Virus record (IMG/VR): IMGVR_UViG_3300020178_000002
Coordinates: 124,001-188,000 of that record
Length of the DNA stretch: 64,000 nt
Strand: one strand, 5' to 3'
Below the pieces are notes generated by a model. That model saw only the letters and a program-made list of their open reading frames with translations, searched no databases and was not told where the DNA came from. Shown here one piece after another: positions 9,101-54,169 of this stretch. A program made the translations under genes and the position numbers. Within the stretch, counting starts at the first letter, position 1, and the number at the start of each line of letters is the position of its first letter.

Positions 9101-9208
9101 ACCCTTTAATAAACCATCCTTATATGAATTGTCTAAACTCCTTAAAGCCAGAGAAGTTGAAGGACTATTGTCGTCACCACTGCGTACATCTAATATGATC
9201 TTGCTCAT
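185..9208 (-). CDS. Very large (3007 aa) putative virion structural protein (baseplate/tail-associated)
   Basis: 9 kb uninterrupted ORF, rich in G/S/D/V/L, with repeated beta-type segments (e.g. LIEGEDYRV, FTEGVDYDI, LSEGKDYKID); phage context. No enzyme motif recognised. Confidence 0.55.
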   Translation of the reverse strand: MSKIILDVRSGDDNSPSTSLALRSLDNSYKDGLLKGREDYFIGGDLGDILYISAGDGEIGVESRDISFTYLYAVGEKHYYGTGLRDGLVSEVFDDLGSSLRLLYRGTVVESDRSDLDVGLGLVGLGFWWTRNDIERSRYYWSGSSWSLLMGTEGESIGVVGDDLGVVGLEGRLILGGESYEIGGLEIPLISDGGEIPEGVEGVVYTPSGELGVVGHLGEEVIYLRQEGLEEKGSLVSRGSYLSPCPSVIETPLLRDGDRGYMEVIRVLDFSEEIERGVVELLEDGRISYGAIESEGLSYDGLVLGHSGLDLVGYDLGQVVGSVDIPLDFVPDGSGVEPSGVEPSGFESDGSRLVLSYSEKRYWVGIGSELLECLFVKDLPKVLDRNVGYILGSRVYLASSWSKLVSTEGHKLYGGRVGCLGGVYASQLSEKNWLVESGSFRLTNGDVCDFTRSGVVGSDGVDFIGGHILIKEGYEVSYPSTESERILLKGLGLMPGGHNGLYMNLLGSTVKGYERYDSESIGVVNDVSTQQFLNFRPRQDLGGYSDGGYYKAGENKLIEGEDYRVNSLGFDWIGSGSLRGSVREPLSTINLDYGVIEGSTSLKVKSDFGDAGFTEDTFTEGVDYDIRQGVLRLKKDLGSEVARGYSLTNLGSGLYSLLGDSSLIRAGDFISWGSFYVKVESVMGGGQFTLSSSDLVSGEGIWSCLRGYREGLVEGETPDLTRLSGEVLKSYSASDDVEVYKVYSTLRLDEVRDFKSKLLIRSGEQDCPLVVLREENVEKTPYYNYDVEDVHILSDSYRLRVDGVDYRDGVSVDNLRFITSSGRFVFQEWDGETWFESDWVTSDVILIREPRENLEDIAEVSLSGDDLSSPFASLDSFLVQTLGVSFNPTSGSISFSEPLDSGIGLEVLYTSLDGEDLIETLVFYVSGEEAVRQSDKRYTFNSEGRDVEFDLSPSIYIDSRKLRSFEYTFTGSQITFREPVSLESKVKVSYGVKSSIGGEQAVRLSGSILSSKFKIDQGTNTILTPVDLTGEIESGDLIKVGLEWFEVSSVSSSEITTTLPCRSNTEAGKLYKFIVPLLTYDSVDRQNAFISLVGCELRSKPKSPEFTIKGDFVSYFKPQTLMRVEGVLYEVLQSTLTEDGYTLITIQGFSFGHSFTSDASSLIVSYRPILEEGEKNLPVSTGVISEYPYVLIKYDHLKGYGYELSEGKDYKIDLETGLVILVGLGVSESTSYYFLHTALTSLNPIYLAGGRASYPSYEISYKASKQPSEYKGLNLETSCFVYAPDTFNIRVVDEDVYAGEVAGNLIKRVQSSNGNGAKRTLNGAVTYGSSLSFYDILAEDVVARSRVLLYDGYVSPLEDIMSTATGDVVGDRDGRFKFDLMKAGHWGGAGLEDPLTREIQPRYVLQELLYPLNSDLYPSAFDLIKVDDKTPDVSTLKSLMEDQKKLIMNEMDDYVMTSWARSLETDITLPYPHLRYGHLPQYQQSYEPSIFSRLFPTETEIQTVTVPGDLYSDRDAKTTNGSVIAFAENLSLGQITNLSSLTLKKRPSRFRVISYSAYGFPEIDLQSKGQPTFLVSAVSLDDFPYLNGLPDTARFISEGGSVPDITTGNPDFVFQGLSIGTHLSLSVGDFMQPILDVSDISRLDSVFGLDVPPKPRLAKVSKLLSGCLVVLDGNSGTLEVAGVSLSDAEIVLGDTLSENIDQDLDSEENLNVYRVGSDVGLKYNTGEIIDISLPSFEDPSFPWKEIEDQNVPKGLTALEGKASFVYNSVDPFIYPALQGLPVNDAGDYSLPYLKSLSERDVLAENQKLIPRVLLEASNNGVLESVYPDDLRDNSALIASGYLTTSEDFSVVSGDALQSPRQGDLILIKPESLGAGSSATGISELALVQGTDLLMPHFQSPTDANSFSLTNVSVELASDLDRGVTVRERLIYNNSISAWDSSITDILFAGYDNIDSILDKITTDGGTLTIKIHDYYGPDSVFQIVLTYDAGWFIKTVNNDGVEVFAQNISVTGYTANSIEITQSQIPNILTVAEEVNWPSNAAWETWLYNSVALSHFWGAVIAYRFFTRQGSERVAEMGLGNNYPIIYLDYRLDVEFGLSNSDYIDSNRLDFISDFDFNSLHSNTNEQTLLDAGGGQTSLKVTSVFEILSSGVFVKEESGGGFTLIESDINTNTKMGYDPYLFDSGLIEVIDLNRLRFKSLHNISRSDLPLSLFVGSEVQESGEILSGTGRYGKYTSVLAPFSSFRGFIREISEDLGSLENVQIGDLIYLDKGHASGTHRISSVELVDNSSTFAESLTNSSILGAVFPTITSVSYDLGVARIETDMEDLSLHFNDAGYREIVILLNDNYLVAPSSEVLGAYDQTFSTSALRLEYDSLDGSSFLVSSDPEYLDGQSLLLSSLPALLDSAGQTIAGIHKFSFDTLKTSLVSSLHIVDVEGSFDYSLQVAGGLTGTSSSLSSIYDGFIVSGLYTLRVLFGGSWSASFASILDGAGNDYGEAFITPEDIITFTVNSYRGIYLDNSFPELWRDYRGTEPVLLGDPTSQVKTFSDYTVSGTTGWVGYEEVGFVVRRLRRFSELFTRLHTTLTGFRFLYDERYGIVSQIDRVGDLIRLASVEDYFDYSGQGTNIGLFTDTVSIGDIVRCFDEEDNETLKFRVSEVDDTYLLGKVVSGSLSDLHSYFKVEVRDSLVPEIQSFEKFISHGFEEVYSSEPVDGISVDQVNELTDTNVDFNLLLNADDQELYYLIIDPQGLLPNTLDEYGQPPLGDDSQGVFGSPSPLDDNRGVYKITSFTANSISVEFYAGDDNPEDYFLPLVNGVSSNELRVTSGIENGTYTANPNSIHPFSYKIYKRKTYLNDSLAALVFFFRERTLSWADKIRQFNSIPLERQTWALYEAEDLIDKVGVNDNTHPSNDLLISTILGDGSFPFSDDMLSVPDRRLLVEDPQMLNEGHTLVTGMPSLFNSGLSIMEAREKRNRWIKVRTNTVEGTLQKLSRIDLASPDIKALEDIDE

Positions 9209-27846: not shown

Positions 27847-28947
27847 ATGAATAAAGTATCTGCACAGCAAATCAGATCTCTTGAGGTCAGAATAGCTAGG
27901 CTTGAAAAAGAAGCTGGCTTTCAAGAGTTTATGGAAAGTGTCTCTAGTACATTTAAAAGCATAGTTAACATTCCTAAAAACATGGTGATTAGGATAATAA
28001 ATGCTTTTAAAGAAATTTTTACAACTGTAGAACTGTCATTAGAAGACGAAGAAAAAACAATTGAAAATGCACTTGGCTTTTTATTGGGTTCTCGCATCTT
28101 TAGAGCAATGGCTGGAGTCATAACAACAACAGATGATTTGCCTACGATTGTTAAATTCAATAGGAAGCAGCCTTTAAAGTCTACATTCACGGGTGGGCTT
28201 GCAGGAAAGGCTAAGGTTCAATTAAAGAACCTTATTAAGCGTTATAATGAAACAAACCAGACAAGAATGAAGTCTGCCTATCTTTCATGGTATTCAGATT
28301 TCAAGCACATCCTAAACCCAAAAATTAAAGAAGTTGAGGGTGTTGAATTTGCACTTCGAGAAATCAAGAAGGTCTCAAAGTTAGCATATAGGTTCTTGTC
28401 TTCAATCATCTCTGTATTAGGTGGTGTTGTTGCTATTAAAGGGACAGTGATCTCAACTCTGCTATTTATACTAGGTAGGATCTTTTTGCAGAAGTATGGT
28501 TTTCCAGTAGGAAGACCTAGTGAATGGACTCAAAATGAAGTTGTTTTTTCAAAGGTCACTGTTGAACCCGTAAATGCTACTATACATAGGAATGTAATAG
28601 ACGTTACCAGAGATAGATATAGTGATTATAAGAAACTTTCTCCTATACAAAAGCAGATTTTTGTTGAAAAAATACATGCTAAGGTAGAACAACACCCAAT
28701 GAAAAATTGGCAACCAGATTCAGCAGCTAACCTTCAAGATGTTAAGGATTGGATTAGATGGAAGCCTATTCAGTTTACCACAGCAATCTTGACACCTATT
28801 TTAGCACTCATTGAAACAATTATGTACAAGTGGGTGATTAAGACAGACGAATATGATGAAATGGTAAAAGAGCTAGAATCAAGAAATAAGAAAGCTTCTC
28901 AATACCCAACACTCTCTTATTTAACTCAGATTTTAGAAGGCAGGTGA
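27847..28947 (+). CDS. Leader-tagged hydrophobic paralog 1
   Basis: MNKVSAQQIRSLEVRIARLEKEAG; STFTGG; two hydrophobic segments; KKASQYP tail. Confidence 0.85.
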   Translation: MNKVSAQQIRSLEVRIARLEKEAGFQEFMESVSSTFKSIVNIPKNMVIRIINAFKEIFTTVELSLEDEEKTIENALGFLLGSRIFRAMAGVITTTDDLPTIVKFNRKQPLKSTFTGGLAGKAKVQLKNLIKRYNETNQTRMKSAYLSWYSDFKHILNPKIKEVEGVEFALREIKKVSKLAYRFLSSIISVLGGVVAIKGTVISTLLFILGRIFLQKYGFPVGRPSEWTQNEVVFSKVTVEPVNATIHRNVIDVTRDRYSDYKKLSPIQKQIFVEKIHAKVEQHPMKNWQPDSAANLQDVKDWIRWKPIQFTTAILTPILALIETIMYKWVIKTDEYDEMVKELESRNKKASQYPTLSYLTQILEGR

Positions 28948-28950
28948 GAC

Positions 28951-30051
28951 ATGAATAAGGTATCAGCACAACAAATTAGATCTCTTGAGCTTAGGATAGC
29001 TAGGCTTGAAAAAGAGGCTGGCTTTATAGATGATATGGTAGGTGTCTTTAAAAAGACACTCAACATACCTAAGAATATGTTCTTAAAGATACTTTATGCC
29101 TTCAAAGAAGTTTATGATGATGTTGTTGTATGGAACACAGAATCAGAATCTAAGGCTATGGATTCATTAGGTGCATTATTGGGCATAAGAATATTTAGAT
29201 CTTTAGCTGGTGTTATAACTACAAGTGAGGGTTTACCTAAAATTGTCAAGTTCAACTACTCTGACCCTTTAAGCTCAACCTTCACAGGTGGACTTGCAAT
29301 GAAGTCTAATATCCCTCTTAAGAAGCTTATCAATATGTATGAGGGTGAGAACCAGACCAGAATGAAGAGAGCTTACACTTCATGGTATGCAGACTATAAA
29401 GAAATCATAAACCCTTCTGTCTCTGATAGAGAAGCGATTGATATTTTCTTAGATCTTTGTAAAAGAGGTGGGAAGTGGCTCTATCGCTTAATGACTGCCC
29501 TTATAGGTTTGGTTGGTATAGCGACTCTTAAGTCCACAGTCATATTCAACATCATTATTATGGTTGTACAGAGATATGTGCAGATAGGGATGTTTGATTT
29601 TCGAAATATGGATAAGAGAATTCTGGACTTCCAAGAAACAACAGTAAAGTATATAGACATAAAATCTGTTAAGTATCTTGAAGCAGAGGGTGTTATTGAA
29701 AACACTCACAAATTCATATCTGATGTTCTGGTTGGTGGGAGAGGGTATGTTCCTCGAAAAGAAGTAAAGGAATTTACTCTCGCTATTGTTGAAAAGCCCT
29801 TGCAGAAATACCAACCTATTGATTTTGTGTCTTGGAAAAAAGTTAGAGAGTACATGACACAAAACTACACTACCTTTATTGGTGTTTTCCTAACAGGATT
29901 CTTAGCTCTACTTGAGAAAGCACTTTATAAATGGGTCTTTAAAACAGAAGACTATGAAAAGATGAAAGCTGAAAGTGATGCAATGGGCAAGACAGCTTCT
30001 AAATACCCTGCAATTGCTTATATGGCTAGAAAGCTAGAAAGCTATTTATGA
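28951..30051 (+). CDS. Leader-tagged hydrophobic paralog 2
   Basis: Same leader; STFTGG; KTASKYP tail. Confidence 0.85.
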   Translation: MNKVSAQQIRSLELRIARLEKEAGFIDDMVGVFKKTLNIPKNMFLKILYAFKEVYDDVVVWNTESESKAMDSLGALLGIRIFRSLAGVITTSEGLPKIVKFNYSDPLSSTFTGGLAMKSNIPLKKLINMYEGENQTRMKRAYTSWYADYKEIINPSVSDREAIDIFLDLCKRGGKWLYRLMTALIGLVGIATLKSTVIFNIIIMVVQRYVQIGMFDFRNMDKRILDFQETTVKYIDIKSVKYLEAEGVIENTHKFISDVLVGGRGYVPRKEVKEFTLAIVEKPLQKYQPIDFVSWKKVREYMTQNYTTFIGVFLTGFLALLEKALYKWVFKTEDYEKMKAESDAMGKTASKYPAIAYMARKLESYL

Positions 30052-30632
30052 TATACTCGCTTCAATGTACCTACTCAAATGGCATAAGAATAAACTCTTT
30101 AAATATATCACTTGCTAATGGACAGTCTTTCGATTGCCCAAAGCAAACATATGATACTAATAAAGAAATCCAAGCTCTGGTGTCCTCTGGTATGTTGAAG
30201 CTAAAAGTAAAAGAACACAAGTCTGGCCTTAGAGCGAACTCTAATAAACGAGTTTTACGAAGCAACCCGACTAATGAGAGAGTTGTAGAGAGAGTTGTAG
30301 AGAGAGTTGTTGAATCCCCAATAGACATGGATGCAATCACTAGGAATGTAGTTGAGCAAATAGGTGCTGTACTATCTCCTGAGATATTGGCTCAAGCAAT
30401 TGCAGCACAACTCCCTACTGTCCAAGCTAATTACCCACAGAAAAATGAGGGTAATAGTTCTTTTATGTCTTCTAGTGAAGACAATCTAATGTTTATCCCC
30501 TCTACTATTGTAGATAGAAATACTGTTGCTTCTAAATCCTCTGCCTCTGAAAGCATATCGGAAGACTCTGATGGTCTTGCTGATGCTATGGCTGCTTTAA
30601 AAGCAATGAAAAAGAAGAAAGGTCAAACCTAA
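30048..30632 (+). CDS. Hypothetical protein with ERVV x3 repeat
   Basis: 194 aa, overlapping both neighbours; 12-bp coding repeat GAGAGAGTTGTA. Confidence 0.75.
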   Translation: MIYSLQCTYSNGIRINSLNISLANGQSFDCPKQTYDTNKEIQALVSSGMLKLKVKEHKSGLRANSNKRVLRSNPTNERVVERVVERVVESPIDMDAITRNVVEQIGAVLSPEILAQAIAAQLPTVQANYPQKNEGNSSFMSSSEDNLMFIPSTIVDRNTVASKSSASESISEDSDGLADAMAALKAMKKKKGQT

Positions 30633-31564
30633 TGAATAAAGTATCTGCACAGCAAATCAGATCTCTTGAAATGAGAATTGCCAGACTCGAAAGAGAGGCT
30701 GGTCTTAAAGAAATCTTTGATGACATCTCTGGATTTGTTAAAGGTGTTGTTAACATTCCTAAAAACTTCATCAAGAAAATCATCAATGTTTTCAAAGATG
30801 TTGGAAACAACCTAACTGTCCTTCTTTCAAAACAAGAAGATAGGATTGTTAGAGCCCTTAAATCTGCATTGGGAATCCGAGTAGCTGCGACTCTTGAAGG
30901 CTTTGTTATAGATACTAGAGATCTTCCTATCATTGTAGACTTTAATCTTATGAATCCTATTAAGTCTACTTTCACAGGTGGCAATGCAGGATCTTCAAAA
31001 GTATCTTTGGACAAGTTGGCATCTCTCTATGATGGAGAAGAAGCTAGAAGAATTAAGTCAGCTTTCCTTTCATGGAAATCAGACTACCTTCCTTCTTTAA
31101 ATGCATTACAAGGAAAAGATGATGTTGGAGTTATTAAGGGCTTTCTAAAACTGATACAAAGGTCATCTAAACTGCTTTACAGATTCTTGAAGATTGCTCT
31201 AAGCATATTCAGCATTGCCCAGCTTATTGCAGCACCTTGGGGATCTTGGGTTTTAGGTTTAGCTATGGTCTTCATAGGGAATCATAATATGTTGCCTATA
31301 TCAGCCGACTATACTCTTCTAACAGATAAGAGTCTAGCTAATATTATGGATGCCAAAGACTTCTTACCTCGTAATGAAGTTCCATTGTTGAAATCTTTTG
31401 GTCCTGCTATTATCACTACTGTTCTTAAGATTCTTGAAAAAGCATTCTATCGCTATGGTGTTAATGTTGATGCCTTTGACGAGGAATCTATGGGTAGAAC
31501 AGCTTCTCAATTCCCAAGAGTTGCTTCTGTAACTAGAAGACTCGAACACTACGCTTACGCTTAA
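30632..31564 (+). CDS. Leader-tagged hydrophobic paralog 3
   Basis: Same leader; STFTGG; RTASQFPRVAS tail. Confidence 0.85.
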   Translation: MNKVSAQQIRSLEMRIARLEREAGLKEIFDDISGFVKGVVNIPKNFIKKIINVFKDVGNNLTVLLSKQEDRIVRALKSALGIRVAATLEGFVIDTRDLPIIVDFNLMNPIKSTFTGGNAGSSKVSLDKLASLYDGEEARRIKSAFLSWKSDYLPSLNALQGKDDVGVIKGFLKLIQRSSKLLYRFLKIALSIFSIAQLIAAPWGSWVLGLAMVFIGNHNMLPISADYTLLTDKSLANIMDAKDFLPRNEVPLLKSFGPAIITTVLKILEKAFYRYGVNVDAFDEESMGRTASQFPRVASVTRRLEHYAYA

Positions 31565-31615
31565 TATCTTATTTATCATTAGCTTCCTGTGAAAAAAACA
31601 CAGGGGGCTGATGAT

Positions 31616-31747
31616 ATGACAAGATACCAGATGAAAAGATTAGAGATGAGGATTTCCAGAAAACTCGAAAGGAAGTCCAAACTTCAACTTCAGCGTATCT
31701 ATCAGAGATTAGCTTCTTTAGAAAAAGAGGTTAAATCCAATGAATAA
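31616..31747 (+). CDS. 43-aa peptide made of two leader-like motifs (not in the ORF track)
   Basis: MTRYQMKRLEMRISRKLERKSKLQLQRIYQRLASLEKEVKSNE; AGGGGG SD; own TA-N5-TTTAT motif. Confidence 0.65.
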   Translation: MTRYQMKRLEMRISRKLERKSKLQLQRIYQRLASLEKEVKSNE

Positions 31748-32669
31748 AGTATCTGCACAGCAAATCAGATCTCTTGAAATGAGAATAGCTAGACTTGAAA
31801 GAGAAGCTAGCTTTCAAGATGTTTTGGATGACATCAGTGGTTTTGTTAAAGGTGTTGTTAATATCCCTAAGAACTTTATTAAAAACATCATCAATGTTTT
31901 GAAGGATGTAGGTAACAACCTTAAAGCAACTTTTGCTGAACAGCGTGAAGTTATTTGTGAAGCCCTAGAGTCTGCATTGGGAATCCGAGTAGCTGCTACT
32001 CTACAAAACTTTATTGTAGATACCAGAGACATGCCTGTTATCGTTGAGCTCAATGTAATGAACCCAATCAAGTCGATATTCACAGGTGGTAAAGCTGGTT
32101 CTTCAAAGTATGCTCTTGATAAGCTGGCATCTCTTTATGACCGTGAAAGGTCTAAAAGAATCAAGTCTGCATACCTCTCTTGGAAGTCAGACTACTCTTC
32201 TCAAATAGATATTCTTCAAGGAAAATTTGATGAGTCTAACTCTGTTAAAAGATTAATGAAGTTTCTTCAAAGAAGCTCTAAGGTTGCTTATAGATTTTTC
32301 AAAGTTCTTTTCAGCATAGTCTCTATGACAGAGGTTATTGCAGCACCTTGGGGCTCTTGGATTATTGACCTAGCAACAATTACAGTAGGGTCACTTGATC
32401 TAATACCATTTTTACCAAAAGAGTCATGGACTCTTAGTAAAGTTGAAAGTATCACTGGTTTATCTTTCACTACCAATACCCTGAGTAAAAGTGTGGTCAA
32501 GACAATCCCTGCTACAATAGTCACCTCTGTTCTTAAGCTTCTTGAAAAAGCATTCTATCGCTATGGTGTTAATGTTGACGCTTTTGACGAGGAATCTATG
32601 GGTAGAACAGCTTCTCAATTCCCAAGAGTTGCTTCTATAACTAGAAGACTTGAAAACTATATCCTTTAG
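31740..32669 (+). CDS. Leader-tagged hydrophobic paralog 4
   Basis: Same leader; close paralog of 30632..31564 with a near-identical 3' end. Confidence 0.85.
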   Translation: MNKVSAQQIRSLEMRIARLEREASFQDVLDDISGFVKGVVNIPKNFIKNIINVLKDVGNNLKATFAEQREVICEALESALGIRVAATLQNFIVDTRDMPVIVELNVMNPIKSIFTGGKAGSSKYALDKLASLYDRERSKRIKSAYLSWKSDYSSQIDILQGKFDESNSVKRLMKFLQRSSKVAYRFFKVLFSIVSMTEVIAAPWGSWIIDLATITVGSLDLIPFLPKESWTLSKVESITGLSFTTNTLSKSVVKTIPATIVTSVLKLLEKAFYRYGVNVDAFDEESMGRTASQFPRVASITRRLENYIL

Positions 32670-32683
32670 AAAGGCTCGAAAGA

Positions 32684-33091
32684 ATGAATAAAGTATCTGC
32701 ACAGCAAATCAGATCTCTTGAAATGAGAATAGCTAGACTCGAAAGAGAGGCTGGTCTTATAGACCATTTCTATAAATCTCCATACAAAGAAAAACTAAGC
32801 CCTGAAGATATAATAAAAGGCTTTATTAAAGTTTTTAATCGTGCTTGTAGACATGGAAGTGTTATGTCTATCTACTCAGACCCATATGAAAATGATTTCA
32901 TCCTTACCTTGAGACTTAACATCGGGATTGTAAAAATAAAAGTTTCTATAGATGGGGAATTGATAGAGGTCTATAAAAATGATGGTGCTGTATACACAAG
33001 GCTTATGGCATCTTTTGAATACAAAGATATTAAAAAGGGAATGGTCAAGGTTGTTAAAGCCCTTGAAGCTAAATCTATTTACTATGTATAA
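32684..33091 (+). CDS. Leader-tagged hypothetical protein with unrelated body
   Basis: Identical MNKVSAQQIRSLEMRIARLEREAG leader, then no visible similarity to paralogs 1-4. Confidence 0.8.
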   Translation: MNKVSAQQIRSLEMRIARLEREAGLIDHFYKSPYKEKLSPEDIIKGFIKVFNRACRHGSVMSIYSDPYENDFILTLRLNIGIVKIKVSIDGELIEVYKNDGAVYTRLMASFEYKDIKKGMVKVVKALEAKSIYYV

Positions 33092-33151: not shown

Positions 33152-34144
33152 ATGAGTAAAGGTGTAGGATTAGATATTGGAACTATGAACCTTGTTTCAT
33201 CAAGAATGAATAAGAAAGAAGTTTCAATCAGAAGAATGAGAGACTTGTTTATTGACCTGCCTGCTTCTGCAAAGAAAATGCTTAAGTTAGGTTCGGTTTC
33301 ATATATTGAGTCTGACGAGCATTTATTGGTTCTTGGCGATGAAGCTATGGAAGTTGCAAATATGTTCGGCAGAGAGGGTCGTAGACCCCTTAAAGCAGGT
33401 CTTGTCTCTCCAGACGAGATTGACTCCCTCACAGTTCTTGGTCACATGGTTAAAGATGTGCTTGGAGAGCCTTCACATGAGGGTGAGCATTGCTACTTCT
33501 CTATCCCAGCAGCACCTGTTGATGTTCAAATGGATGTTGTTTACCACAAGGGAGTATTTACTCGCATTGTTCAAGAATGTGGATATACCCCTCACCCAGC
33601 AAATGAAGCTATGGCTATTGTATTTGCAGAGACAGCTAAAGAGGGCTTCTCAGGCATTGGCATTAGTTTTGGTTCAGGTATGACCAACATTGCTCTTGCA
33701 ATTAACACCATTGAGGGTCTCAGCTTCTCAGTTGCTAGAGGTGGGGATTGGATTGACCAAGGTGCTGCAAGATCAGTTGGTGGTACAGCCTCTAAGATGT
33801 GTGCTGTCAAAGAGAAAGGCATTGACCTTAATGCACCTAAGAATAGAGAAGAAGAAGCAATCTCCTTTTACTATAAGGCTTTGATTGAACATGCTCTTGA
33901 TAACATTGCTCAACAGTTTGTAATGAAGGGTGGACACCTTACTCTCAACAAGCCTATTCCAATTGTAGTAGGTGGTGGAACAAGTCTAGCTGGTGGGTTC
34001 ATGGATTTCTTTAGAGAGGTCTTTGAAACTAAGCGTAAGCGTTTCCCTATCGAGATCTCTGAGGTACGTCATGCTTCTGACCCATTCCATGCAGTTAGCA
34101 AGGGTATGTTAGTTCTTGCCCAACAAGAGTATGACGAGGATTGA
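33152..34144 (+). CDS. Actin-fold (MreB/FtsA/ParM superfamily) ATPase
   Basis: Phosphate-1 GLDIGTMN, connect NEAMA, phosphate-2 GISFGSGMTNI, adenosine VVGGGTSL; AAGGAG SD. Confidence 0.85.
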   Translation: MSKGVGLDIGTMNLVSSRMNKKEVSIRRMRDLFIDLPASAKKMLKLGSVSYIESDEHLLVLGDEAMEVANMFGREGRRPLKAGLVSPDEIDSLTVLGHMVKDVLGEPSHEGEHCYFSIPAAPVDVQMDVVYHKGVFTRIVQECGYTPHPANEAMAIVFAETAKEGFSGIGISFGSGMTNIALAINTIEGLSFSVARGGDWIDQGAARSVGGTASKMCAVKEKGIDLNAPKNREEEAISFYYKALIEHALDNIAQQFVMKGGHLTLNKPIPIVVGGGTSLAGGFMDFFREVFETKRKRFPIEISEVRHASDPFHAVSKGMLVLAQQEYDED

Positions 34145-34577: not shown

Positions 34578-35516
34578 TTAGAAGTTGAAGATACAATCCT
34601 CAGGAAGTTTATCTTCTCTCCAACGCTCTAAGATAGGGTGACGAATAGCACCTGTCGGGTACTGTCCATACCCTTTAATTTCAGCAACACGACCTACGAA
34701 CTTTTCCATTTGGTCTCGAGGTCCTGTCTCTCCAAGAGAACCTACAACACGAAGATTGCCTTCTTTGTCATAGAATCCATAGTTGAGTCCTACATAACCT
34801 TTTGACCAAGGATCTGTGTGAAGACCCTCTGGGTAGAGTTTGCCATCAGTGCCAACCTCTCCAGGTCGGACTCTCCACTCGCTTGGCTTTGCATTAGCGT
34901 CTACAATCACAACGTCATAGTTGTCAGTAAACTTTAACTTAGCCCAAGAAGAACGGCTATTTGCTTTGTAAGGTGCGTTCACATCTTTTAGCATAATACC
35001 CTCATGTCCTCGCTCTAAAGCGATTTGCATGAGATCCTCAGTGTTATTCTCTCCCATGCTGTAAATCTCTGAAAGACAAAGATTTGAGAATGAAGAATCG
35101 AAAACACTTTCAAGGATAGCTCTACGCTCTTTCCATGAGAGGTCTCCTACATATTGTCCGTTGTGATAAACAATATCGAAAGCTGAAAAAACAAGGCTCT
35201 CTGGAGACTCGGCTCTAAGGTTGGAAACTCGGTCAGAACCCTCTGCACCTTCTCTGGGGATAATCTCTCCATCAAGAAGTGTTCCTGCTGGAACTTCTGC
35301 TTGAGCATGACTTAGACACTTAATGTCTTTTCCGATTCGTGACCATGCCACGTTATTTGAAATAAGACATCGGTGTCCATCGAGCTTCATTTCAGCAATG
35401 TAGTCTGATGACCCATTAACTTTATCCACCAACTTTTCTTTTGCAGTCTTCGCAAGTTGGGGGCGAAGAAACTTATAAACACCACAAGGTGAACTTACAT
35501 CAATTTTCTTTGGCAT
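34578..35516 (-). CDS. lig: ATP-dependent DNA ligase
   Basis: Motif I EMKLDGHR (KxDG), III LDGEI, IIIa FDIV, IV EGIMLK, V KLK, and OB-fold IRHP...WREDK. Confidence 0.92.
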   Translation of the reverse strand: MPKKIDVSSPCGVYKFLRPQLAKTAKEKLVDKVNGSSDYIAEMKLDGHRCLISNNVAWSRIGKDIKCLSHAQAEVPAGTLLDGEIIPREGAEGSDRVSNLRAESPESLVFSAFDIVYHNGQYVGDLSWKERRAILESVFDSSFSNLCLSEIYSMGENNTEDLMQIALERGHEGIMLKDVNAPYKANSRSSWAKLKFTDNYDVVIVDANAKPSEWRVRPGEVGTDGKLYPEGLHTDPWSKGYVGLNYGFYDKEGNLRVVGSLGETGPRDQMEKFVGRVAEIKGYGQYPTGAIRHPILERWREDKLPEDCIFNF

Positions 35517-35583: not shown

Positions 35584-36393
35584 TTAGATGTAAGGAACAG
35601 ATTTTGGTCTCTTGTCTACAATGCGATATTCGTTACCGAATTTATCTTTAACATAGAGACTTTTTAAGTCACTAGAAACTCTAAGCTTTCTCTTGTATTT
35701 CTTCATAGTTTCTACATTAATGAGTTCTACACTTTGATTCCTTTTGTAGTACTTATTAATCATGTAGACATTTGGGTGACTATCGCTTACAAGGAAAGCT
35801 CCTATGATGCCAATGCTTGTGTATTTACTATCTTTGAATCCCTCAAGCTGCTCAGGTGTAACATTTTTATTCTTATTTGCACGAACACCACTCATGTCAG
35901 TATTCATAAATATAGCATCTTTAAAACTATTATTAATAATAGTAGATCTTTCTAGGCTTGCCTCTCGAAAAGAGACTCCATTCAAATTATTATGCATAAA
36001 ACTTGAGTTGTCTAGTGAAGCAATGTTGAAATATGCCCCTGTAAGATTACTTTCGTCAAAGGTAGACCTCTGAAGGTCACAGCCCGAGAACTCTGCATAT
36101 ATAGCTTTACATTTGAAAAGATGAACATTACCTTTGCTTAATTGTAACTGTGTAGTTAGCATTGTGCAATTTATAAATTTGGTATCTTTAAAACTACATC
36201 GCCCTAAGTTTGCACCACTAAGGATACAATTTTTAAAAGTAGTGCCATGAAGTTTTGTCTCTGAAAGATTTGCACTTGTGAAATCCACACCTGTGAATGT
36301 CTTATTAGAGAGATCTATTTCTTCAAGACTTGCGTGTTGTAAGTTCTTATTTCCAGCCATTAGTTGGTCTACAGAAAATTGATGTGCTGACAT
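35584..36393 (-). CDS. Pentapeptide-repeat protein
   Basis: A[DN][LF]xx periodicity (ASLEE IDLSN...VDFTS ANLSE...ANLGR...SNLTG AYFNI ASLDN). Confidence 0.9.
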   Translation of the reverse strand: MSAHQFSVDQLMAGNKNLQHASLEEIDLSNKTFTGVDFTSANLSETKLHGTTFKNCILSGANLGRCSFKDTKFINCTMLTTQLQLSKGNVHLFKCKAIYAEFSGCDLQRSTFDESNLTGAYFNIASLDNSSFMHNNLNGVSFREASLERSTIINNSFKDAIFMNTDMSGVRANKNKNVTPEQLEGFKDSKYTSIGIIGAFLVSDSHPNVYMINKYYKRNQSVELINVETMKKYKRKLRVSSDLKSLYVKDKFGNEYRIVDKRPKSVPYI

Positions 36394-42186: not shown

Positions 42187-45100
42187 ATGGCTATCGAAGG
42201 AAGCAGCTATCTGCCACCTGGTGTCTATACCAACACCATTTTTGAAACACAAAACCAGAATCAAGCTCTGGTACAAGGTCGTGTGCCTACACTTATAGGT
42301 ACAGGTCGTGAAACAGTTATTAGTACAGGAAATATTCTTGTCAGAGGTTCATCTTCAACAGTAGATCAACGTATTGTAGAAGAAGACCCTACTGGAAGAA
42401 TGGTCTCTGGTGTAGATGGGAATGGAAATTACATCTACACTGATTATAGTGAGGGTGCTAACCAACTACAAGTTAGACACTTTCCTATTGTATCAGGAGA
42501 TGGTTCTGGAAGTACAACTAATGTCCCTAGCTCTGTAACAGTTTCTATTAATGGAACAAACACAGTCATTATCTCTTTAGATGGTGCAAATGGTTTGATC
42601 ACTTTAGCAGAAGCACCTAAAGAGGGTGATGATGTAAGAGTCTCTTACTTCTTTAATAGAACAGACACTTTGGTAGAGGGTGAAAACCTTTCAAGCCAAG
42701 TATCTCCTCAAGACACAGAGCTTTTGGGTAGCAACTCTAACTTTGTTATTGATGCAAGCTCAAATACTCTTATCCTTACTGTGGATGGCGAGACTGGTGT
42801 TATCACTCTCCCTAATGGAGCCGCTGGTGATAGAGCCAACTCTCTACAAAGAGTTATTGCTACTCTTAATGGTGCTGGTCTAGCAACCCTCGAAGCAGAC
42901 TCTTACACTGATGCAGAAGGCAATGACAATCTTATCCTTACTGCAAAAGGTTCTATTCTTGTAGGTAATGGTACAGCGAATTTCTCTGTTGGTGTTTATA
43001 ACAACCAAACAGGAACAGCTCGTAATCGTACTTTCTACACTCAATATGGACCTATTGTAGATGGAAGCAATGGTGGTGTGGTCACTACCGACACATCACT
43101 TGTCACTATCCGAGTTAATGGTGTTGAAGTGACACCTGCTTCTGTCGATGGTGCAAATGGATCTATTACTTTAGCTCTAGCTCCTGTAGTAGACTCAAGC
43201 ATTGAGGTTGATTACTACCACAATACATTCCAAGATCAGTTTGATTACATTCCAGGCAGAGACATTACCTCTATCGACAGAGTTTCTTTAGTTGCTTCTG
43301 GTGGTGGTGGACCATCTTTGTTTGTTCAAGATGTTGACTTTGTTCTTTCAGAGGATCGAATTGTCTGGGGATCTGCTTCTGTGGTATCTGCTGGTTCAAT
43401 TCAAGAGGGTGAAGTTGCTTTCGGAAGCAATCAAATCAGTTCTTCTTTAAGAGATGAGAAAGCATATCTTGTTGAATGTTCTTCTGTTTCAACAACAACT
43501 ATCCCACCTCGAGTTCTCTCAAATACTTTCAAGCTTCCTTTCCAACCTGTAGATGGTTCAGGTTTAGGTAAACCAACTAGAAGAACAGATCTCGTTGAAG
43601 TAAGAACTGGGGTTTCTTTAGCAGATGCTTTGGAGAGAAGTCCTGCCACAGTTGTTAAAGTAGACCCTGTAAATTCACAAGTGGTTCTATCCTCAGCAGT
43701 TCCAACAAACCATAAGGTTTTTGCAAGCTTCTACTACTCAAACATCCAAGACAGCTTTGGCACTTCAGCTTATGTTGTGGAGGTAGAGAGTGTTGGTGCT
43801 TCTGGCATTGGTACATATTCTCTTTCATCTCCTACTAGAACCTTCTATAGTGTTGATTTGGAGAGTAAGGGTGTAGATCTTCAAGAAGTTACTTTAACAT
43901 TCCCTTCTGGATCTGAAGCAAGATCTGGTGCTAGGATTGCTGATGGAACTCCTGTTTCAGAGAATGTGACTGTTGAAATCAGAAACTATGATGAAACACC
44001 TGCATTTTTCTTCTCTGAAGGCTTTGGTGACTACTTCCTAATTCAAGGTTCTTCTGACACCTTAGCGATGGAAATTGATCTTCAAGCAACTACTGTTGAT
44101 TTTTCTGCCCCAATGGGTGCTGGTAGAAATGGTAATATTACAACAGTTGTCGGTGGGGTTCTTCCTTATGATGCTGCATCTAACAATACCAACTATGGTG
44201 CAACAGCTTTAACAAGAGCTATGACTCTTACTGTTGATGGTATTACATTTGCAGAGGCTTCAATTAATGGTGTTGGTGATGATGTAGAAGATTGGGTTTC
44301 TGCAATCAATACTGTTGCTGATGCAGAAGCACCTGTTTACACTTCAATGTCAGCATTTGGTGCTTGGGAAGCTAAAGCCAACACCTATGCCTCTTTCAAG
44401 TTCAGATATGTAGGTGATAGCAATGGTTCAAGTGTTGCTACTGCTACTATCCAAGCTGCTGTGTATTTAAGTCAAACAGATCTTGCTAATGCTGTATCTA
44501 CAGCTATCACGAATGCAATCGCAAATGATATTGTAAATGCAAATGCAGACTTCACAGGGTTAAGCTTAACCTGTGGTGTAGATAGCTTGAGTAGATTGAC
44601 TTTCTCATTGGACTCGCTTCCTAATCTGAATGATACTTATGGCTTCATTGAGTTTATTTCAGATACAGATACCTCGTTCTTAACAATTGCTGGTATTGAC
44701 TATGATACTGAAAATAACACTACAAATGGAAATGGTACTCAGACTAAGTTCGGATATCTTCCTGTAGCAGCTTTCTCAAGAACAACCCTTACCTCTGGAG
44801 AGCTTAGAGATAGACTCATCCTTAAGGGCAGAACTGTGGTTGGTAATTCTTACTATCCTGTTTCTGACCTTGGTGTTTCAATTGATCAAGGTACAAGAGT
44901 AGAGGATGCTGGTTTTGAAGTTGGAACAGTAGTTCCTTCAGTAAGAACATCAGTAGTAGATGCTCCAAGTATTCTTTTGAGACTCGGTTGGTCAGAAGTT
45001 GATGGCGATGGTATACCTGCAAAGACTCTTTACAGCACAGGCAATGACCAGAACAACACTCTATCTTTAGAGATTGATGGTCAGACTATCAACATCACTC

Positions 45101-46998
45101 TAAATGATGCTACTGCTCAAGGTAATCTGACTTCAATTACAGATATCCTAACAGACATTTCTGGAGACTTGGCTGGAAGTGCTACTGCACATATTGAGGG
45201 TGCTGGTATTCGCATTGTAAATGCTAATGCAAACATCAGCTCTTACATTAAAGTTGGTGCAGGCACAGGGAACAGTGCATTTGGTGTCACAGAGGGAGAT
45301 TCTGTCTCTGCTGTGGGTGTAAGTGCTAAAGCTGTTGTTTCTTCTCTTATGAGTCATTCTGAAGCTAAAGCTAATTTCTCTACCTCTTTGTTCTCAACAG
45401 AGCCACAAGCAAATGCTGCTGTTGGTTATTATGCAGACAAAGCTGTTGCATATGTGTTCAAGAATCAAGTTGGCAGAGAGTATGTTGGATTTGAGAGTCT
45501 TTCTACAGGAAATTCATCTATCCTTGAAGTCACTGGTGGAAGAATTGCAACAACTAAGGGCAATGGTCTTAAGCTTGTTGTAGGCTCTGGTGCAGTAGGT
45601 GAGGAAGCATATCAAGGATTTGTTGTTACTTCAGACAATGCACAAGGTTCTGGTTCTGCAAACACCTCTCGACTAAATGATGCTGTTGGTGCAGATGGTA
45701 TCATTGGTCAAACATATATAGATGAAGTGACAGGCTTAACCTTTACTTTACTTGAGAGAGAAGGTGGTATTGATTATCCTACAGGTGCAGATGCACAGAT
45801 TAGTTTCAAGGTAGGTACTGTCTTCACATCTAATGCGAATATCCCGACTCCAGCTATTCCAGGTGTTTCATTGATTGTATCTAACACTTTAGATACTTCT
45901 ATTGGTGATACTGCATTGGTTGAAGTTTTTAATAAAGAAGGTAATGAGCCAAACTTAGGTCAGGTTTATTATGTTGACTTTACTAGAATTCGTACTGAGT
46001 TTAATACTCGTACCTTCTCTAGTCTTGCAGATGTCATTTCAACCTATGGTGAGATCAGCCCAAATAACTCTTTGAGTCTTGGTGCTTTGTTAGCTTTCTC
46101 AAATGGTGCAACTGCAATAGCCTGTAAGCAAGTTCAACTTGAAGCAGGAGAGTCAAGCTTAAGTGAAGATCAAGTGGTTCAAGCAATCCAAGACCTTGAG
46201 GGTGAGATTGTTCCAGGATTGACACCATCTGTTATTGTTCCTTTGTACCCAGCCACTACAGCGATTGTTTCTGCAATCTCTAACCACTGTGACATTCAGT
46301 CCTCTTTGCGTTATCGTTCAGAGCGTAGAGCTGTTTTGGGTGTAAGAGCTGGAACACAACCTAGAGAAGTACAGTCTCTAGCACAATCTGCAAACAACAC
46401 AAGAATCTGTATTGTCTATCCAGACCTTGCAAACGTTTCTTATGTAGATGGAAATGGTATCACTCAAACAATTCTTGTCGGTGGTGAGTATGTTGCTGTT
46501 GCAACAGCTTTAGCAACAAGCAATCCTTCTATTGATAGTGCTACTCCTTGGACAGGTCGTTCTATTGCAGGTATTTCTTCACTTGCTCGTCTACTTGACG
46601 AGGTAGATGCAAATGCAACTGCAAATGCAGGTGTTACAGTTCTTTCTCAAAGAGCTGATGGCATTAAGGTAAGACATGGCTTAACTACAAACATGACTTC
46701 TGTTCTTACAAAGACTCCTACTGTTATCCAGATTGCAGATGACGTTCAGATTCGCTCTAGGAACTTACTTTCACGCTATGTAGGGGTTAAGTTCGTACCT
46801 CAAGTGATTCAGCAAATAGAGGGTAGATTAAACGCTTTCTTTAAGCAACTTGTAAGAGATCAAATCATTTCAACTTACACAGGTCTTTCAGTGTCGAGAG
46901 ATGCAACTGACCCAACTCAGTTGAATGTTGAAGTTTTCTACAAGCCTGTTTACCCACTTCTATATATCCAATTTACTTTCACAGTACAGGGTAGCTAA
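42187..46998 (+). CDS. Contractile tail sheath protein (1603 aa, large insertions)
   Basis: N-terminal YLPPGVYT; C-terminal sheath domain (HCDIQSSLRYRSERRAV, VRHGLTT, YVGVKF, VEVFYKPVYPLLYIQFTFTV). Confidence 0.9.
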   Translation: MAIEGSSYLPPGVYTNTIFETQNQNQALVQGRVPTLIGTGRETVISTGNILVRGSSSTVDQRIVEEDPTGRMVSGVDGNGNYIYTDYSEGANQLQVRHFPIVSGDGSGSTTNVPSSVTVSINGTNTVIISLDGANGLITLAEAPKEGDDVRVSYFFNRTDTLVEGENLSSQVSPQDTELLGSNSNFVIDASSNTLILTVDGETGVITLPNGAAGDRANSLQRVIATLNGAGLATLEADSYTDAEGNDNLILTAKGSILVGNGTANFSVGVYNNQTGTARNRTFYTQYGPIVDGSNGGVVTTDTSLVTIRVNGVEVTPASVDGANGSITLALAPVVDSSIEVDYYHNTFQDQFDYIPGRDITSIDRVSLVASGGGGPSLFVQDVDFVLSEDRIVWGSASVVSAGSIQEGEVAFGSNQISSSLRDEKAYLVECSSVSTTTIPPRVLSNTFKLPFQPVDGSGLGKPTRRTDLVEVRTGVSLADALERSPATVVKVDPVNSQVVLSSAVPTNHKVFASFYYSNIQDSFGTSAYVVEVESVGASGIGTYSLSSPTRTFYSVDLESKGVDLQEVTLTFPSGSEARSGARIADGTPVSENVTVEIRNYDETPAFFFSEGFGDYFLIQGSSDTLAMEIDLQATTVDFSAPMGAGRNGNITTVVGGVLPYDAASNNTNYGATALTRAMTLTVDGITFAEASINGVGDDVEDWVSAINTVADAEAPVYTSMSAFGAWEAKANTYASFKFRYVGDSNGSSVATATIQAAVYLSQTDLANAVSTAITNAIANDIVNANADFTGLSLTCGVDSLSRLTFSLDSLPNLNDTYGFIEFISDTDTSFLTIAGIDYDTENNTTNGNGTQTKFGYLPVAAFSRTTLTSGELRDRLILKGRTVVGNSYYPVSDLGVSIDQGTRVEDAGFEVGTVVPSVRTSVVDAPSILLRLGWSEVDGDGIPAKTLYSTGNDQNNTLSLEIDGQTINITLNDATAQGNLTSITDILTDISGDLAGSATAHIEGAGIRIVNANANISSYIKVGAGTGNSAFGVTEGDSVSAVGVSAKAVVSSLMSHSEAKANFSTSLFSTEPQANAAVGYYADKAVAYVFKNQVGREYVGFESLSTGNSSILEVTGGRIATTKGNGLKLVVGSGAVGEEAYQGFVVTSDNAQGSGSANTSRLNDAVGADGIIGQTYIDEVTGLTFTLLEREGGIDYPTGADAQISFKVGTVFTSNANIPTPAIPGVSLIVSNTLDTSIGDTALVEVFNKEGNEPNLGQVYYVDFTRIRTEFNTRTFSSLADVISTYGEISPNNSLSLGALLAFSNGATAIACKQVQLEAGESSLSEDQVVQAIQDLEGEIVPGLTPSVIVPLYPATTAIVSAISNHCDIQSSLRYRSERRAVLGVRAGTQPREVQSLAQSANNTRICIVYPDLANVSYVDGNGITQTILVGGEYVAVATALATSNPSIDSATPWTGRSIAGISSLARLLDEVDANATANAGVTVLSQRADGIKVRHGLTTNMTSVLTKTPTVIQIADDVQIRSRNLLSRYVGVKFVPQVIQQIEGRLNAFFKQLVRDQIISTYTGLSVSRDATDPTQLNVEVFYKPVYPLLYIQFTFTVQGS

Positions 46999-54133: not shown

Positions 54134-54169
54134 AGTCTTGCCCTCTACGATATGAAAGGACTATGCCTT

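What the first reader, a model, noticed from the sequence alone, without database searches (positions are those of the whole stretch)
31563..31747. Stand-alone micro-gene consisting only of two tag-like motifs
Seen: a 43-aa ORF (31616-31747) containing MKRLEMRISRKLERKS and LQRIYQRLASLEKEV, with its own TA-N5-TTTAT motif, SD and SD-occluding hairpin, overlapping the next start. Inference: an empty tag, acting as a competitor/regulator of loading, a core filler peptide, or a donor/relic of tag shuffling.
Basis: partly seen in the sequence, partly recalled or inferred. Interest (0 to 1): 0.6.

Follow-up and report, generated by a model that had tools for sequence, protein, structure and literature searches.

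The report
Conserved tag-like micro-gene in jumbo phage
A 43-codon gene in an uncultured 312-kb marine or salt-marsh phage is real and protected by selection; it encodes one long basic helix resembling two worn copies of the address tag on 24 of the phage's proteins, but what it does is still unproven.

Summary
Window 31616-31747 is a 43-codon ORF in the 175-nt gap after a 310-aa tagged gene. It has a promoter-like motif (31565-31576) and a GGGGG Shine-Dalgarno (SD). Its leader hairpin is larger than reported: 18 bp, 31574-31616, -26.9 kcal/mol, the strongest of 58 comparable leaders in the genome. The ORF overlaps the next ATG by 8 nt.

The ORF is kept in five diverged relatives from metagenomes, always directly after the ~310-aa gene. 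Changes are almost all synonymous (dN/dS 0.03-0.14, p about 5e-5 per contrast). It is therefore a real protein-coding gene, not a relic.

The product is predicted as one continuous helix (pLDDT 95.6), pI 10.7. Both halves resemble the N-terminal tag of 24 phage proteins (p<=0.002 against shuffles). A fixed one-residue insertion makes it fail an ungapped tag profile.

There are no homologues outside this phage clade among 1.84 billion representative proteins.

Function is inferred only. The likeliest role is a tag-mimicking basic helix that takes part in tag-dependent head-core assembly, with translation gated as in T4 gene e. The RNA data and the one complex prediction were uninformative.

The parts
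30632..31564 (+). 310-aa tagged gene that precedes the micro-gene in every relative that has it. Its product ends ...RRLEHYAYA.
31560..31577 (+). Promoter-like motif (extended CTTAATA-N5-TTTAT-C; core TA-N5-TTTAT at 31565-31576). It overlaps the stop codon of the upstream gene and the first 3 nt of the hairpin.
   Evidence: Genome-wide enrichment upstream of starts. Nearly invariant in relatives. Transcription start not mapped.
31574..31616 (+). Leader hairpin of 18 bp with a 7-A loop. It sequesters the SD and ends at the first base of the start codon.
   Evidence: -26.9 kcal/mol, strongest of 58 leaders. Kept with compensatory changes in relatives (92% of cells paired against 36-57% when slid; 3 pairs changed on both sides).
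31603..31607 (+). Shine-Dalgarno GGGGG of the micro-gene, 8 nt before the ATG. Relatives have GAGG or GGGG at the same place.
31616..31747 (+). Micro-gene of 43 codons. The product is 5.4 kDa, pI 10.7 (13 K+R, 5 D+E), predicted as one helix over residues 3-42.
31628..31678 (+). First tag-like motif (residues 5-21, QMKRLEMRISRKLERKS). It is tag-like with a one-residue insertion (K16) and is the nearly invariant core of the family.
31688..31732 (+). Second tag-like motif (residues 25-39, LQRIYQRLASLEKEV). It aligns to the tag without a gap. The hydrophobic a/d positions are kept in all lineages.
31724..31730 (+). AAAGAGG, the SD of the downstream tagged gene, lying inside codons K37-E38-V39 of the micro-gene. 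It is deleted in relative L011, where no gene follows directly.
31740..32669 (+). 309-aa tagged paralogue whose ATG overlaps the micro-gene's end by 8 nt (31740-31747). In relatives this position is taken by the 135-aa tagged gene.

Best explanation
The segment is a genuine small gene, mostly unannotated, of an uncultured ~312-kb tailed jumbo phage. The phage has a contractile-sheath domain, a head protease and a major head protein.

**Product.** The gene encodes a 43-residue, strongly basic, single long amphipathic helix. Its two halves each resemble the ~15-residue N-terminal helix ('tag') carried by 24 otherwise unrelated proteins of this phage.

**Proposed mechanism.**
1. *Shown.* The peptide sequence itself is under purifying selection, most strongly over residues 1-24.
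2. *Shown.* The gene sits inside a hypervariable cluster of tagged genes and heads its own expression unit: promoter-like motif, leader hairpin, SD, micro-gene, then usually a tagged gene coupled by an 8-nt overlap.
3. *Inferred.* The tags act like T4 capsid-targeting sequences, as N-terminal helices that dock cargo onto the prohead core. The micro-protein uses its tag-like hydrophobic seam for the same kind of helix-helix contact. It would then be co-assembled as a small basic core or internal peptide, or occupy or bridge tag-binding sites and so influence loading.
4. *Inferred.* The hairpin acts like the leaders of T4 genes e, soc, 49 and I-TevI. Read-through transcripts from the upstream gene form the full 18-bp stem and are not translated. 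Transcripts started at the gene's own promoter lack part of the 5' arm and are translated, which restricts synthesis in time or amount.
For: **A real gene**
- It is a 43-codon ORF in five lineages: window and L003-L006, L002, L013-L015, L011/L012.
- NG86 (Nei-Gojobori) dN/dS is 0.03-0.14. Binomial p is 3.5e-5 to 6.8e-5 per contrast.
- Residues 1-24 show 9 synonymous against 2 non-synonymous changes versus L011, at saturated dS.
- It is more conserved than its tagged neighbours: 93% against 65% identity for L013.
- In L011 it stands alone behind its own motif, with no coupled gene.

**Tag relation**
- Gapped alignment to the tags is significant for both halves.
- The best non-self hits are tags.
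- The first motif starts at residue 5-6, as canonical tags do.
- The tag of the 135-aa neighbour is modelled as an N-terminal helix (residues 3-22) followed by a low-confidence linker. The micro-protein is one helix, pLDDT 95.6.

**Head context**
- Head protease, hyper-acidic 555-aa scaffold-like protein (pI 4.1) and major head protein lie 21-26 kb downstream.
- The peptide is basic, like T4 internal proteins. Those enter the acidic gp22 core through an N-terminal CTS (capsid targeting sequence) (PMC9026906; PMC3012670).
- One tagged protein is a pentapeptide-repeat protein.
- Tagged genes are rearranged as cassettes at tag-coding repeats.

**Gating**
- The hairpin is the strongest of 58 leaders and shows covariation.
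- The probability that the SD is unpaired rises from 0.00-0.22 to 0.4-0.9 if transcripts start 6-10 nt after the motif.
- The T4 precedent is described in PMC3014915.
Against: - There is no direct evidence of translation or of presence in virions. Metatranscriptome contigs cover neighbouring genes but not 30847-31731.
- The function of the tags themselves is unproven. No tag receptor is known, and the T4 cleavage motif L/I-X-E is not at the tag's end.
- The first motif has an insertion that shifts the heptad register and fails the ungapped tag HMM. It may therefore not bind what tags bind.
- The LEKE of the second motif may be kept for the downstream SD rather than for tag-like function.
- Complex prediction with the scaffold-like protein gave no verdict.
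- In the window's own phage, a residual 9-bp stem (-11.4 kcal/mol) would still cover the SD after a +6 start.
- The more distant relatives L008 and L009 lack the gene at this position, so it is not essential to the whole group.
Confidence: 0.4

Rival explanations
1. Tag-binding escort or adaptor ('anti-tag'). The 40-residue helix pairs with the tag helices of newly made cargo, up to two per peptide. It would keep them soluble or bundle them, rather than using the tags' receptor itself.
For: - There are two tag-like segments on one uninterrupted helix.
- Tags have a heptad pattern with complementary g/e charges that would allow tag-tag-type pairing (by inspection).
- It is constantly adjacent to tagged genes and coupled to one in four of five lineages.
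Against: - No interaction was tested.
- The net charge of +8 on the peptide and +2 on the tags does not favour pairing.
- No co-variation is seen between the peptide variants and the neighbouring tags.
Confidence: 0.15
2. Nucleic-acid-binding basic peptide. It could be a DNA counter-ion or condensing peptide. It could also be an RNA-binding regulator of the arginine-rich-motif kind, for example one that represses its own hairpin-bearing leader.
For: - pI 10.7, with 13 K+R in 43 residues.
- It is helical.
- A conserved A-rich-loop hairpin lies immediately upstream in the same transcript.
Against: - The hairpin loop and upper stem differ between L002 and the window while the peptide is identical except for S41P. 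The lower stem differs in L013. No conserved RNA recognition element accompanies the invariant peptide.
- The continuous hydrophobic seam argues for protein-protein contact.
- No Rfam family was found.
Confidence: 0.15
3. Expression device only. The ORF is a leader cistron whose translation opens or loads ribosomes for the downstream tagged gene, which has no promoter of its own. The peptide itself has no role.
For: - There is an 8-nt stop/start overlap in four of five lineages.
- The downstream gene's SD is embedded in the ORF.
- One promoter-like motif serves micro-309-135.
Against: - A pure leader needs an open frame, not a fixed amino-acid sequence, yet dN/dS is 0.03-0.14.
- In L011/L012 the ORF is kept with its own motif, hairpin and SD although nothing is coupled to it.
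Confidence: 0.12
4. Non-functional relic of tag duplication or shuffling, or a chance ORF.
For: - It lies between tandem paralogues that recombine at tag-coding repeats.
- The ungapped tag HMM is not significant.
- Most gene callers did not call it.
Against: - The frame, start and N-terminal 24 residues are preserved across lineages with dS up to saturation.
- There is no DNA similarity to the tag repeats.
- SD and hairpin are conserved.
Confidence: 0.03

Closest known systems
T4 capsid targeting sequence (CTS) and internal proteins IPI/IPII/IPIII, Alt (PMC9026906, PMC3012670)
   Same: - A short conserved N-terminal peptide sits on many otherwise unrelated, fast-evolving proteins.
- The cargo genes are clustered and vary between close relatives.
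- Cargo is basic and the core protein acidic.
- The tag-coding DNA is kept nearly identical among neighbouring genes.
   Different: - The tag here is a ~15-residue heptad helix (I-x-x-L-E-x-R-I-A-R-L-E-K-E), not T4's 10-residue CTS.
- There is no L/I-X-E site at its end.
- Packaging and cleavage are unproven.
- I found no described T4 gene that consists only of CTS-like sequence, so the micro-gene has no counterpart in that system to my knowledge.
Small T4 prohead core proteins and peptides (gp67, gp68 and their fragments) (PMC9026906)
   Same: They are small proteins that are part of the scaffolding core and are encoded among head genes.
   Different: There is no sequence similarity. The T4 proteins are processed fragments of larger precursors. 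Incorporation of the 43-mer is only inferred.
T4 gene e / soc / 49 / I-TevI leaders: an SD-sequestering hairpin whose 5' strand is encoded at a late promoter (PMC3014915)
   Same: - The hairpin buries the SD and abuts the AUG.
- A conserved promoter-like motif overlaps the 5' arm.
- An upstream gene on the same strand can supply read-through transcripts.
- About a dozen other genes of this phage have the same layout.
   Different: - The promoter motif (TA-N5-TTTAT) differs from TATAAATA and its class is unknown.
- Transcript 5' ends are not mapped.
- In the window's phage a 9-bp residual stem could persist.
Arginine-rich-motif peptides binding RNA hairpins (lambda N / boxB)
   Same: A short basic helix is encoded next to an A-rich-loop hairpin.
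   Different: The hairpin's loop and stem sequences vary while the peptide stays invariant. The peptide has a leucine-zipper-like seam. The resemblance is recalled from memory and was not supported by the comparison.

Membership tests
N-terminal tag family of this phage (24 proteins) | Ungapped match to the tag profile (I-x-x-L-E-x-R-[IV]-A-x-L-E-K-x-[AS]) within the first ~15 residues | tested here: inconclusive
   The ungapped HMM gives 5.7 bits, E = 6. Gapped Smith-Waterman is significant for both halves, p <= 0.002. The first motif starts at residue 5-6 as in tags but has a fixed one-residue insertion.
N-terminal tag family of this phage (24 proteins) | Tag followed by a linker and a cargo domain | tested here: not met
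   The protein ends 4 residues after the second motif. AF2 gives one helix over 3-42 with no further domain.
T4-type CTS / internal-protein system | Short conserved N-terminal peptide shared by otherwise unrelated, variable proteins | tested here: met
   24 ORFs carry the tag at residues 1-15. The bodies are unrelated and mostly without Pfam domains. The cluster is hypervariable while the neighbouring volactin gene is 97-100% identical.
T4-type CTS / internal-protein system | Propeptide removed by the prohead protease after an L/I-X-E site | tested here: not met
   The tags end L-E-K-[EQ]-[AS], so P3 is E and not L/I (by inspection). Actual cleavage cannot be tested here.
T4-type CTS / internal-protein system | Tagged proteins, and here the 43-mer, are physically inside the head | not testable with these tools
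   This needs virion proteomics. The phage is known only from metagenomes.
T4 gene e-type translational gate | Stable hairpin that sequesters the SD and/or AUG | tested here: met
   18 bp, -26.9 kcal/mol, all 12 nt of the SD window paired. A 15-bp subset of the stem scored z = -6.5 against shuffles. Conserved with compensatory changes.
T4 gene e-type translational gate | Promoter placed so that its transcripts lack the 5' strand of the hairpin | tested here: inconclusive
   The promoter-like motif overlaps the first 3 nt of the 5' arm. Modelled starts at +6 to +10 free the SD partly. No 5' ends were mapped.
Arginine-rich-motif RNA-binding peptides (lambda N-like) | Cognate hairpin with a conserved recognition loop that co-occurs with the peptide | tested here: not met
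   Loop and stem sequences differ among relatives that share an identical or near-identical peptide.
Any described protein family | Significant match in Pfam, PHROGs, PADLOC, PDB sequences, ESM Atlas or metagenomic proteins outside the clade | tested here: not met
   No hits. The only match among 5.8 billion clusters and 1.84 billion representatives is the clade's own P0016.

The most novel reading that the evidence does not exclude
The micro-gene is a dedicated 'tag-only' regulator. It would be a free copy of the capsid-address helix, made under tight translational control. It would compete with or bridge the 24 tagged cargo proteins at their docking sites and so set how much and which cargo a jumbo-phage head takes up. 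No such stand-alone targeting-signal gene is known to me in any phage cargo-loading system.
Probability: 0.15. Interest if true: 0.7.

Novelty: new variant of a known kind. Interest (0 to 1): 0.45.

Why it matters
If the tags are capsid-addressing helices, this phage clade offers a second, independent cargo-loading code besides T4's CTS. The micro-protein would be its simplest natural ligand: a 43-residue peptide that can be synthesised and used to fish for the receptor, to test competition, or to load foreign proteins.

The finding also shows that a 43-codon ORF missed by most gene callers can be under selection as strong as that on a neighbouring actin-like gene (volactin).

The leader hairpins suggest that T4-style translational gating is used widely in a very distant jumbo phage.

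The practical limit is that the phage is uncultured and its host unknown.

Tried and rejected
- **Complex prediction.** The micro-protein against residues 310-405 (coiled-coil part) of the acidic 555-aa scaffold-like protein scored 0.02 against a mark of 0.32. There was no verdict and controls were not run. This is not evidence either way.
- **RNA runs.** Four metatranscriptome runs hold parts of the locus as contigs, one salt-marsh and three marine. None covers 30847-31731. This is uninformative for expression.
- **Cultured-phage records.** There was no DNA or protein match for the locus. The 555-aa protein has only a weak hit to an uncultured 485-kb phage.
- **Viral and JGI contig scans with the peptide profile.** These returned only the genome itself and L012.
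- **Word search with the 43-mer.** It sees only proteins of 24-75 aa and found one cluster, P0016. The exhaustive profile search, which has no length limit, also found only P0016. No longer kin or fusions exist in that library.
- **ESM Atlas, PDB sequences, PADLOC, Pfam, PHROGs, Rfam.** Nothing was found.
- **Intrinsic terminator reading of the hairpin.** There is no T-run and no terminator call.
- **Longer 52-aa form from GTG 31589.** Rejected. The extension lies in the hairpin and is closed by a stop in L002, L013 and L011.
- **Paralogue elsewhere in the genome.** None found.
- **Programmed frameshift fusing the micro-ORF to the next gene (+1 frame).** I saw no slippery site, and L011 has no downstream partner. 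Not pursued.
- **Recent origin from a tag.** There is no significant DNA similarity to tag-coding repeats.
- **Caveat on the dN/dS figures for L011.** The C-terminal dN is inflated by a two-codon shift. The collinear part ends at codon 36.
Full report
**Where the window lies.** The window is bases 124001-188000 of a single 312,136-bp contig, about 38% G+C. It is a tailed jumbo phage.
- A 1603-aa ORF ends in a phage tail-sheath C-terminal domain.
- ORF 52592-54133 matches head-maturation-protease PHROGs.
- ORF 56564-57442 matches major-head-protein phrog_2522 at 8.5e-51.
- Between protease and head protein lies a 555-aa hyper-acidic, Met/Asp-rich repeat protein (pI 4.1) with short coiled-coil stretches. 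By position and composition it looks like a scaffold.
- No cultured phage record resembles the locus.
- Identical or related contigs come from estuarine, marine and salt-marsh metagenomes.

**The tag system.**
- A pattern search and then a profile found 24 ORFs across the genome whose first 1-15 residues carry the same helix-forming motif, roughly I-R-S-L-E-M-R-I-A-R-L-E-K-E-[AS].
- Ten of them lie in the window, eight between 22.2 and 34.5 kb.
- Their bodies are unrelated and almost all lack known domains. One is a pentapeptide-repeat protein.
- In the low-confidence model of the 135-aa member, the tag is an N-terminal helix (residues 3-22) followed by a poorly defined linker.
- Tag-coding DNA is 85-98% identical among neighbouring paralogues whose bodies are only ~63% identical as protein.

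**The observation.**
- The stop of the 310-aa tagged gene is at 31562-31564.
- TA-N5-TTTAT is at 31565-31576.
- GGGGG is at 31603-31607.
- The ATG is at 31616 and the TAA at 31745-31747.
- There is an 8-nt overlap with the ATG (31740) of the 309-aa tagged paralogue.

**The promoter-like motif.** The motif is a real upstream signal of this genome.
- Of its 144 occurrences, 58 lie in the 7% of the genome that is non-coding.
- 59 lie 0-60 nt upstream of a start.
- The extended consensus is TTAATA-N4/5-TTTATA.
- The copy in front of the micro-gene fits the extended consensus. It sits 39 nt before the ATG, within the usual distance.

**The leader hairpin.** It is larger than reported.
- It has 18 consecutive pairs (31574-31591 with 31599-31616) and a 7-A loop.
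- A fold of 31577-31630, which holds 15 bp of the stem, gave -23.1 kcal/mol, z = -6.5 against shuffles.
- From the TAT of the motif to the ATG the energy is -26.9 kcal/mol. This is the most stable of the 58 motif-to-ATG leaders in the genome, and the whole SD window is paired.
- About a dozen other genes have the same layout in weaker form.
- No Rfam family and no intrinsic terminator fit the hairpin.

**Relatives.** The 309-aa neighbour has homologues on metagenomic contigs. Fetching them gave five distinguishable lineages that carry the micro-ORF.

| Lineage | Peptide | Gene order around the micro-gene |
|---|---|---|
| window, L003-L006 | identical to the window | window: 310 - micro - 309 - 135 - volactin; L003-L006: 314 - micro - 135 - volactin |
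| L002 | S41P | 309 - 310 - micro - 135 - volactin |
| L013-L015 | R15K, R19M, V39A | ~310 - micro - 135 - volactin |
| L011/L012 | 83% identical over codons 1-36 | 311 - micro - volactin |

- In every lineage the ORF directly follows the ~310-aa gene.
- In L011 the micro-gene ends 64 nt before the volactin gene, so the micro-gene stands alone behind its own motif, hairpin and SD.
- The rearrangements have their breakpoints at tag-coding repeats.
- The more distant relatives L008 and L009 have only a 72-nt gap at this place and no micro-ORF.
- Only the Logan gene calls list the ORF. The ENA and JGI calls leave the gap empty.

**Selection.**
- Against L002 there are 7 synonymous and 1 non-synonymous changes. 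Against L013 there are 10 and 4. Against L011 there are 18 and 18 (the latter inflated by a two-codon shift at the C-terminus).
- dN/dS is 0.03-0.14, and the deficit of non-synonymous changes has p = 3.5e-5 to 6.8e-5 in each contrast.
- In codons 1-24 the window and L011 differ by 9 synonymous and 2 non-synonymous changes.
- The background divergence of these phages is modest: volactin dS is 0.08-0.43.
- The peptide is better conserved than the tagged genes beside it, 93% against 65% for L013.
- This pattern is what a translated, functional peptide gives. It rules out a chance ORF or a decaying relic.
- The longer form from GTG 31589 is not conserved.

**The product.**
- It has 43 residues, 5.4 kDa, pI 10.7, with 13 K+R and 5 D+E.
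- AF2 with the four-sequence alignment gives one uninterrupted helix over residues 3-42, mean pLDDT 95.6.
- By inspection the hydrophobic positions (6, 9, 13, 17, 25, 28, 32, 35, 39) form one seam with a stutter in the middle.
- Residues 5-21 align to the tag with one inserted residue (K16), which is fixed in all lineages and absent from all 24 tags. Residues 25-39 align without a gap.
- Both halves beat 3000 composition-preserving shuffles (p = 0.0003 and 0.0017), and only 0.1% of random 43-aa windows of the genome's long ORFs score as high.
- The best non-self tblastn hits are tags.
- An ungapped tag HMM does not recognise it: 5.7 bits, E = 6.
- There is no significant DNA similarity to the tag repeats, so any common origin is old.
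- The codons K37-E38-V39 (AAAGAGG, 31724-31730) are also the SD of the next gene. L011, which has lost that gene, has lost exactly these codons. Part of the second 'tag-like' motif may therefore be kept for that reason.
- There is no paralogue in the genome.
- There is no homologue anywhere else: Pfam, PHROGs, PADLOC, PDB sequences, ESM Atlas, the word search (limited to 24-75 aa) and the exhaustive profile search of 1.84 billion representatives (no length limit) find only the clade's own P0016.

**Hairpin conservation and likely role.**
- In the five lineages the stem is kept although both arms change. 92% of cells are paired against 36-57% when the partner is slid. Three pairs changed on both sides, and 8 of 500 shuffles reach the covariation score. 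With five sequences this is moderate support.
- Because the promoter-like motif overlaps the start of the 5' arm, the layout matches T4 genes e, soc, 49 and I-TevI. There, read-through early transcripts fold and hide the SD, while transcripts from a late promoter inside the 5' strand are translated (PMC3014915).
- Modelled starts 6-10 nt after the motif raise the probability that the SD is unpaired from 0.00-0.22 to 0.4-0.9, depending on lineage. In the window's phage a 9-bp residual stem (-11.4 kcal/mol) remains at +6.
- Transcript ends are unmapped, so this step is inference.

**Expression data.** One salt-marsh and three marine metatranscriptome runs contain contigs of neighbouring genes. 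The salt-marsh run is identical in sequence. None of them covers 30847-31731. Contigs at this depth show presence, not absence, so translation and transcription of the micro-gene remain untested.

**Mechanism.**
- *Shown:* this is a conserved, selected 43-residue basic helix. It is encoded as the first cistron of its own small unit inside a hypervariable cluster of tagged genes, behind the tightest SD-occluding leader of the genome.
- *Inferred:* the tags work like T4's capsid-targeting sequences, N-terminal peptides with affinity for the acidic scaffolding core (PMC9026906; PMC3012670).
- *Inferred:* the micro-protein uses its tag-like seam for the same kind of helix-helix contact. It would be co-assembled as a small basic core or internal peptide, or occupy or bridge tag sites.
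- *Inferred:* its strict translational gate suggests that timing or dose matters.
- I give this about 0.4.
- The rivals are a tag-binding escort (0.15), a nucleic-acid-binding peptide (0.15), a mere leader cistron (0.12) and a relic (0.03).
- The leader-cistron and relic readings are weakened by the selection pattern and by the stand-alone copy in L011.
- The RNA-binding reading is weakened because the hairpin's loop and stem vary while the peptide does not.
- The one complex prediction, against the coiled-coil part of the scaffold-like protein, gave no verdict and counts for nothing.

**Comparison and novelty.**
- The system most resembles T4's CTS/internal-protein arrangement in logic. The tag sequence, its helical heptad nature and the missing L/I-X-E site differ. 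Packaging is unproven.
- I found no described gene that consists only of targeting-tag-like sequence. A literature search for the motif found nothing.
- I therefore rate it a new variant of a known kind: a small phage head-associated protein or targeting-tag system, with function still open.
- Interest is moderate (0.45). The gene is real and unusual in form, and it could give a handle on an unstudied cargo-loading code. However, the phage is uncultured and every functional step is inferred.

Noticed in passing
window 33152-34144 (+): This is a volactin-family actin-like gene (PF25216, 5e-74) in a jumbo phage. It is 97-100% identical in protein among relatives whose neighbouring tagged genes are only 45-87% identical (dN/dS about 0.02-0.05).
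   Followed up: partly
window 54152-55819 (+): A 555-aa hyper-acidic protein (pI 4.1, 152 D+E) with Met/Asp-rich tandem repeats and two short coiled-coil stretches lies between the head protease and the major head protein. By position and composition it is a scaffold candidate. It has no family match.
   Followed up: partly
whole genome (G000), e.g. window 27791, 46999; genome 260175(-), 245808(-), 15870(+): The promoter-like motif TTAATA-N4/5-TTTATA lies 20-60 nt upstream of about 59 starts. In about a dozen cases a leader hairpin follows that runs from the TAT of the motif to just before the ATG and pairs an anti-SD with the SD. This is a T4 gene e-like layout used genome-wide.
   Followed up: partly
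window 27847-33091 versus L002, L003, L011: The tagged paralogues are inserted, deleted or reordered between close relatives, with breakpoints at the near-identical tag-coding 62-nt repeats. The 309-aa gene is absent in L003, placed before the 310-aa gene in L002, and the 135-aa gene is deleted in L011. This is cassette shuffling like that of T4 internal-protein loci.
   Followed up: partly
genome 225808-226434 (-), locus L029: One tagged protein is a pentapeptide-repeat protein (PF13599, 8.6e-14). An untagged pentapeptide-repeat gene lies at window 35584-36393. These may be DNA-mimic-type proteins, by analogy only.
   Followed up: no
window 185-9208 (-) and 42187-46998 (+): A 3007-aa ORF has no Pfam match. 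A 1603-aa ORF has only its last ~90 residues matching the tail-sheath C-terminal domain, plus a weak DUF2460 hit near the N-terminus.
   Followed up: no
window 60900-62267 (+): A 455-aa protein carries a eukaryotic-type topoisomerase IB catalytic core (PF01028, 3.6e-17). An ATP-dependent DNA ligase lies at 34578-35516 (-), as annotated on the relatives' contigs.
   Followed up: no
window 30632-31564, 31740-32669, 27847-30051: By eye, the ~310-aa and 366-aa tagged paralogues contain long hydrophobic stretches, for example around residues 190-230 of the 310-aa protein. These could be membrane segments, as in ejection proteins. This was not analysed.
   Followed up: no
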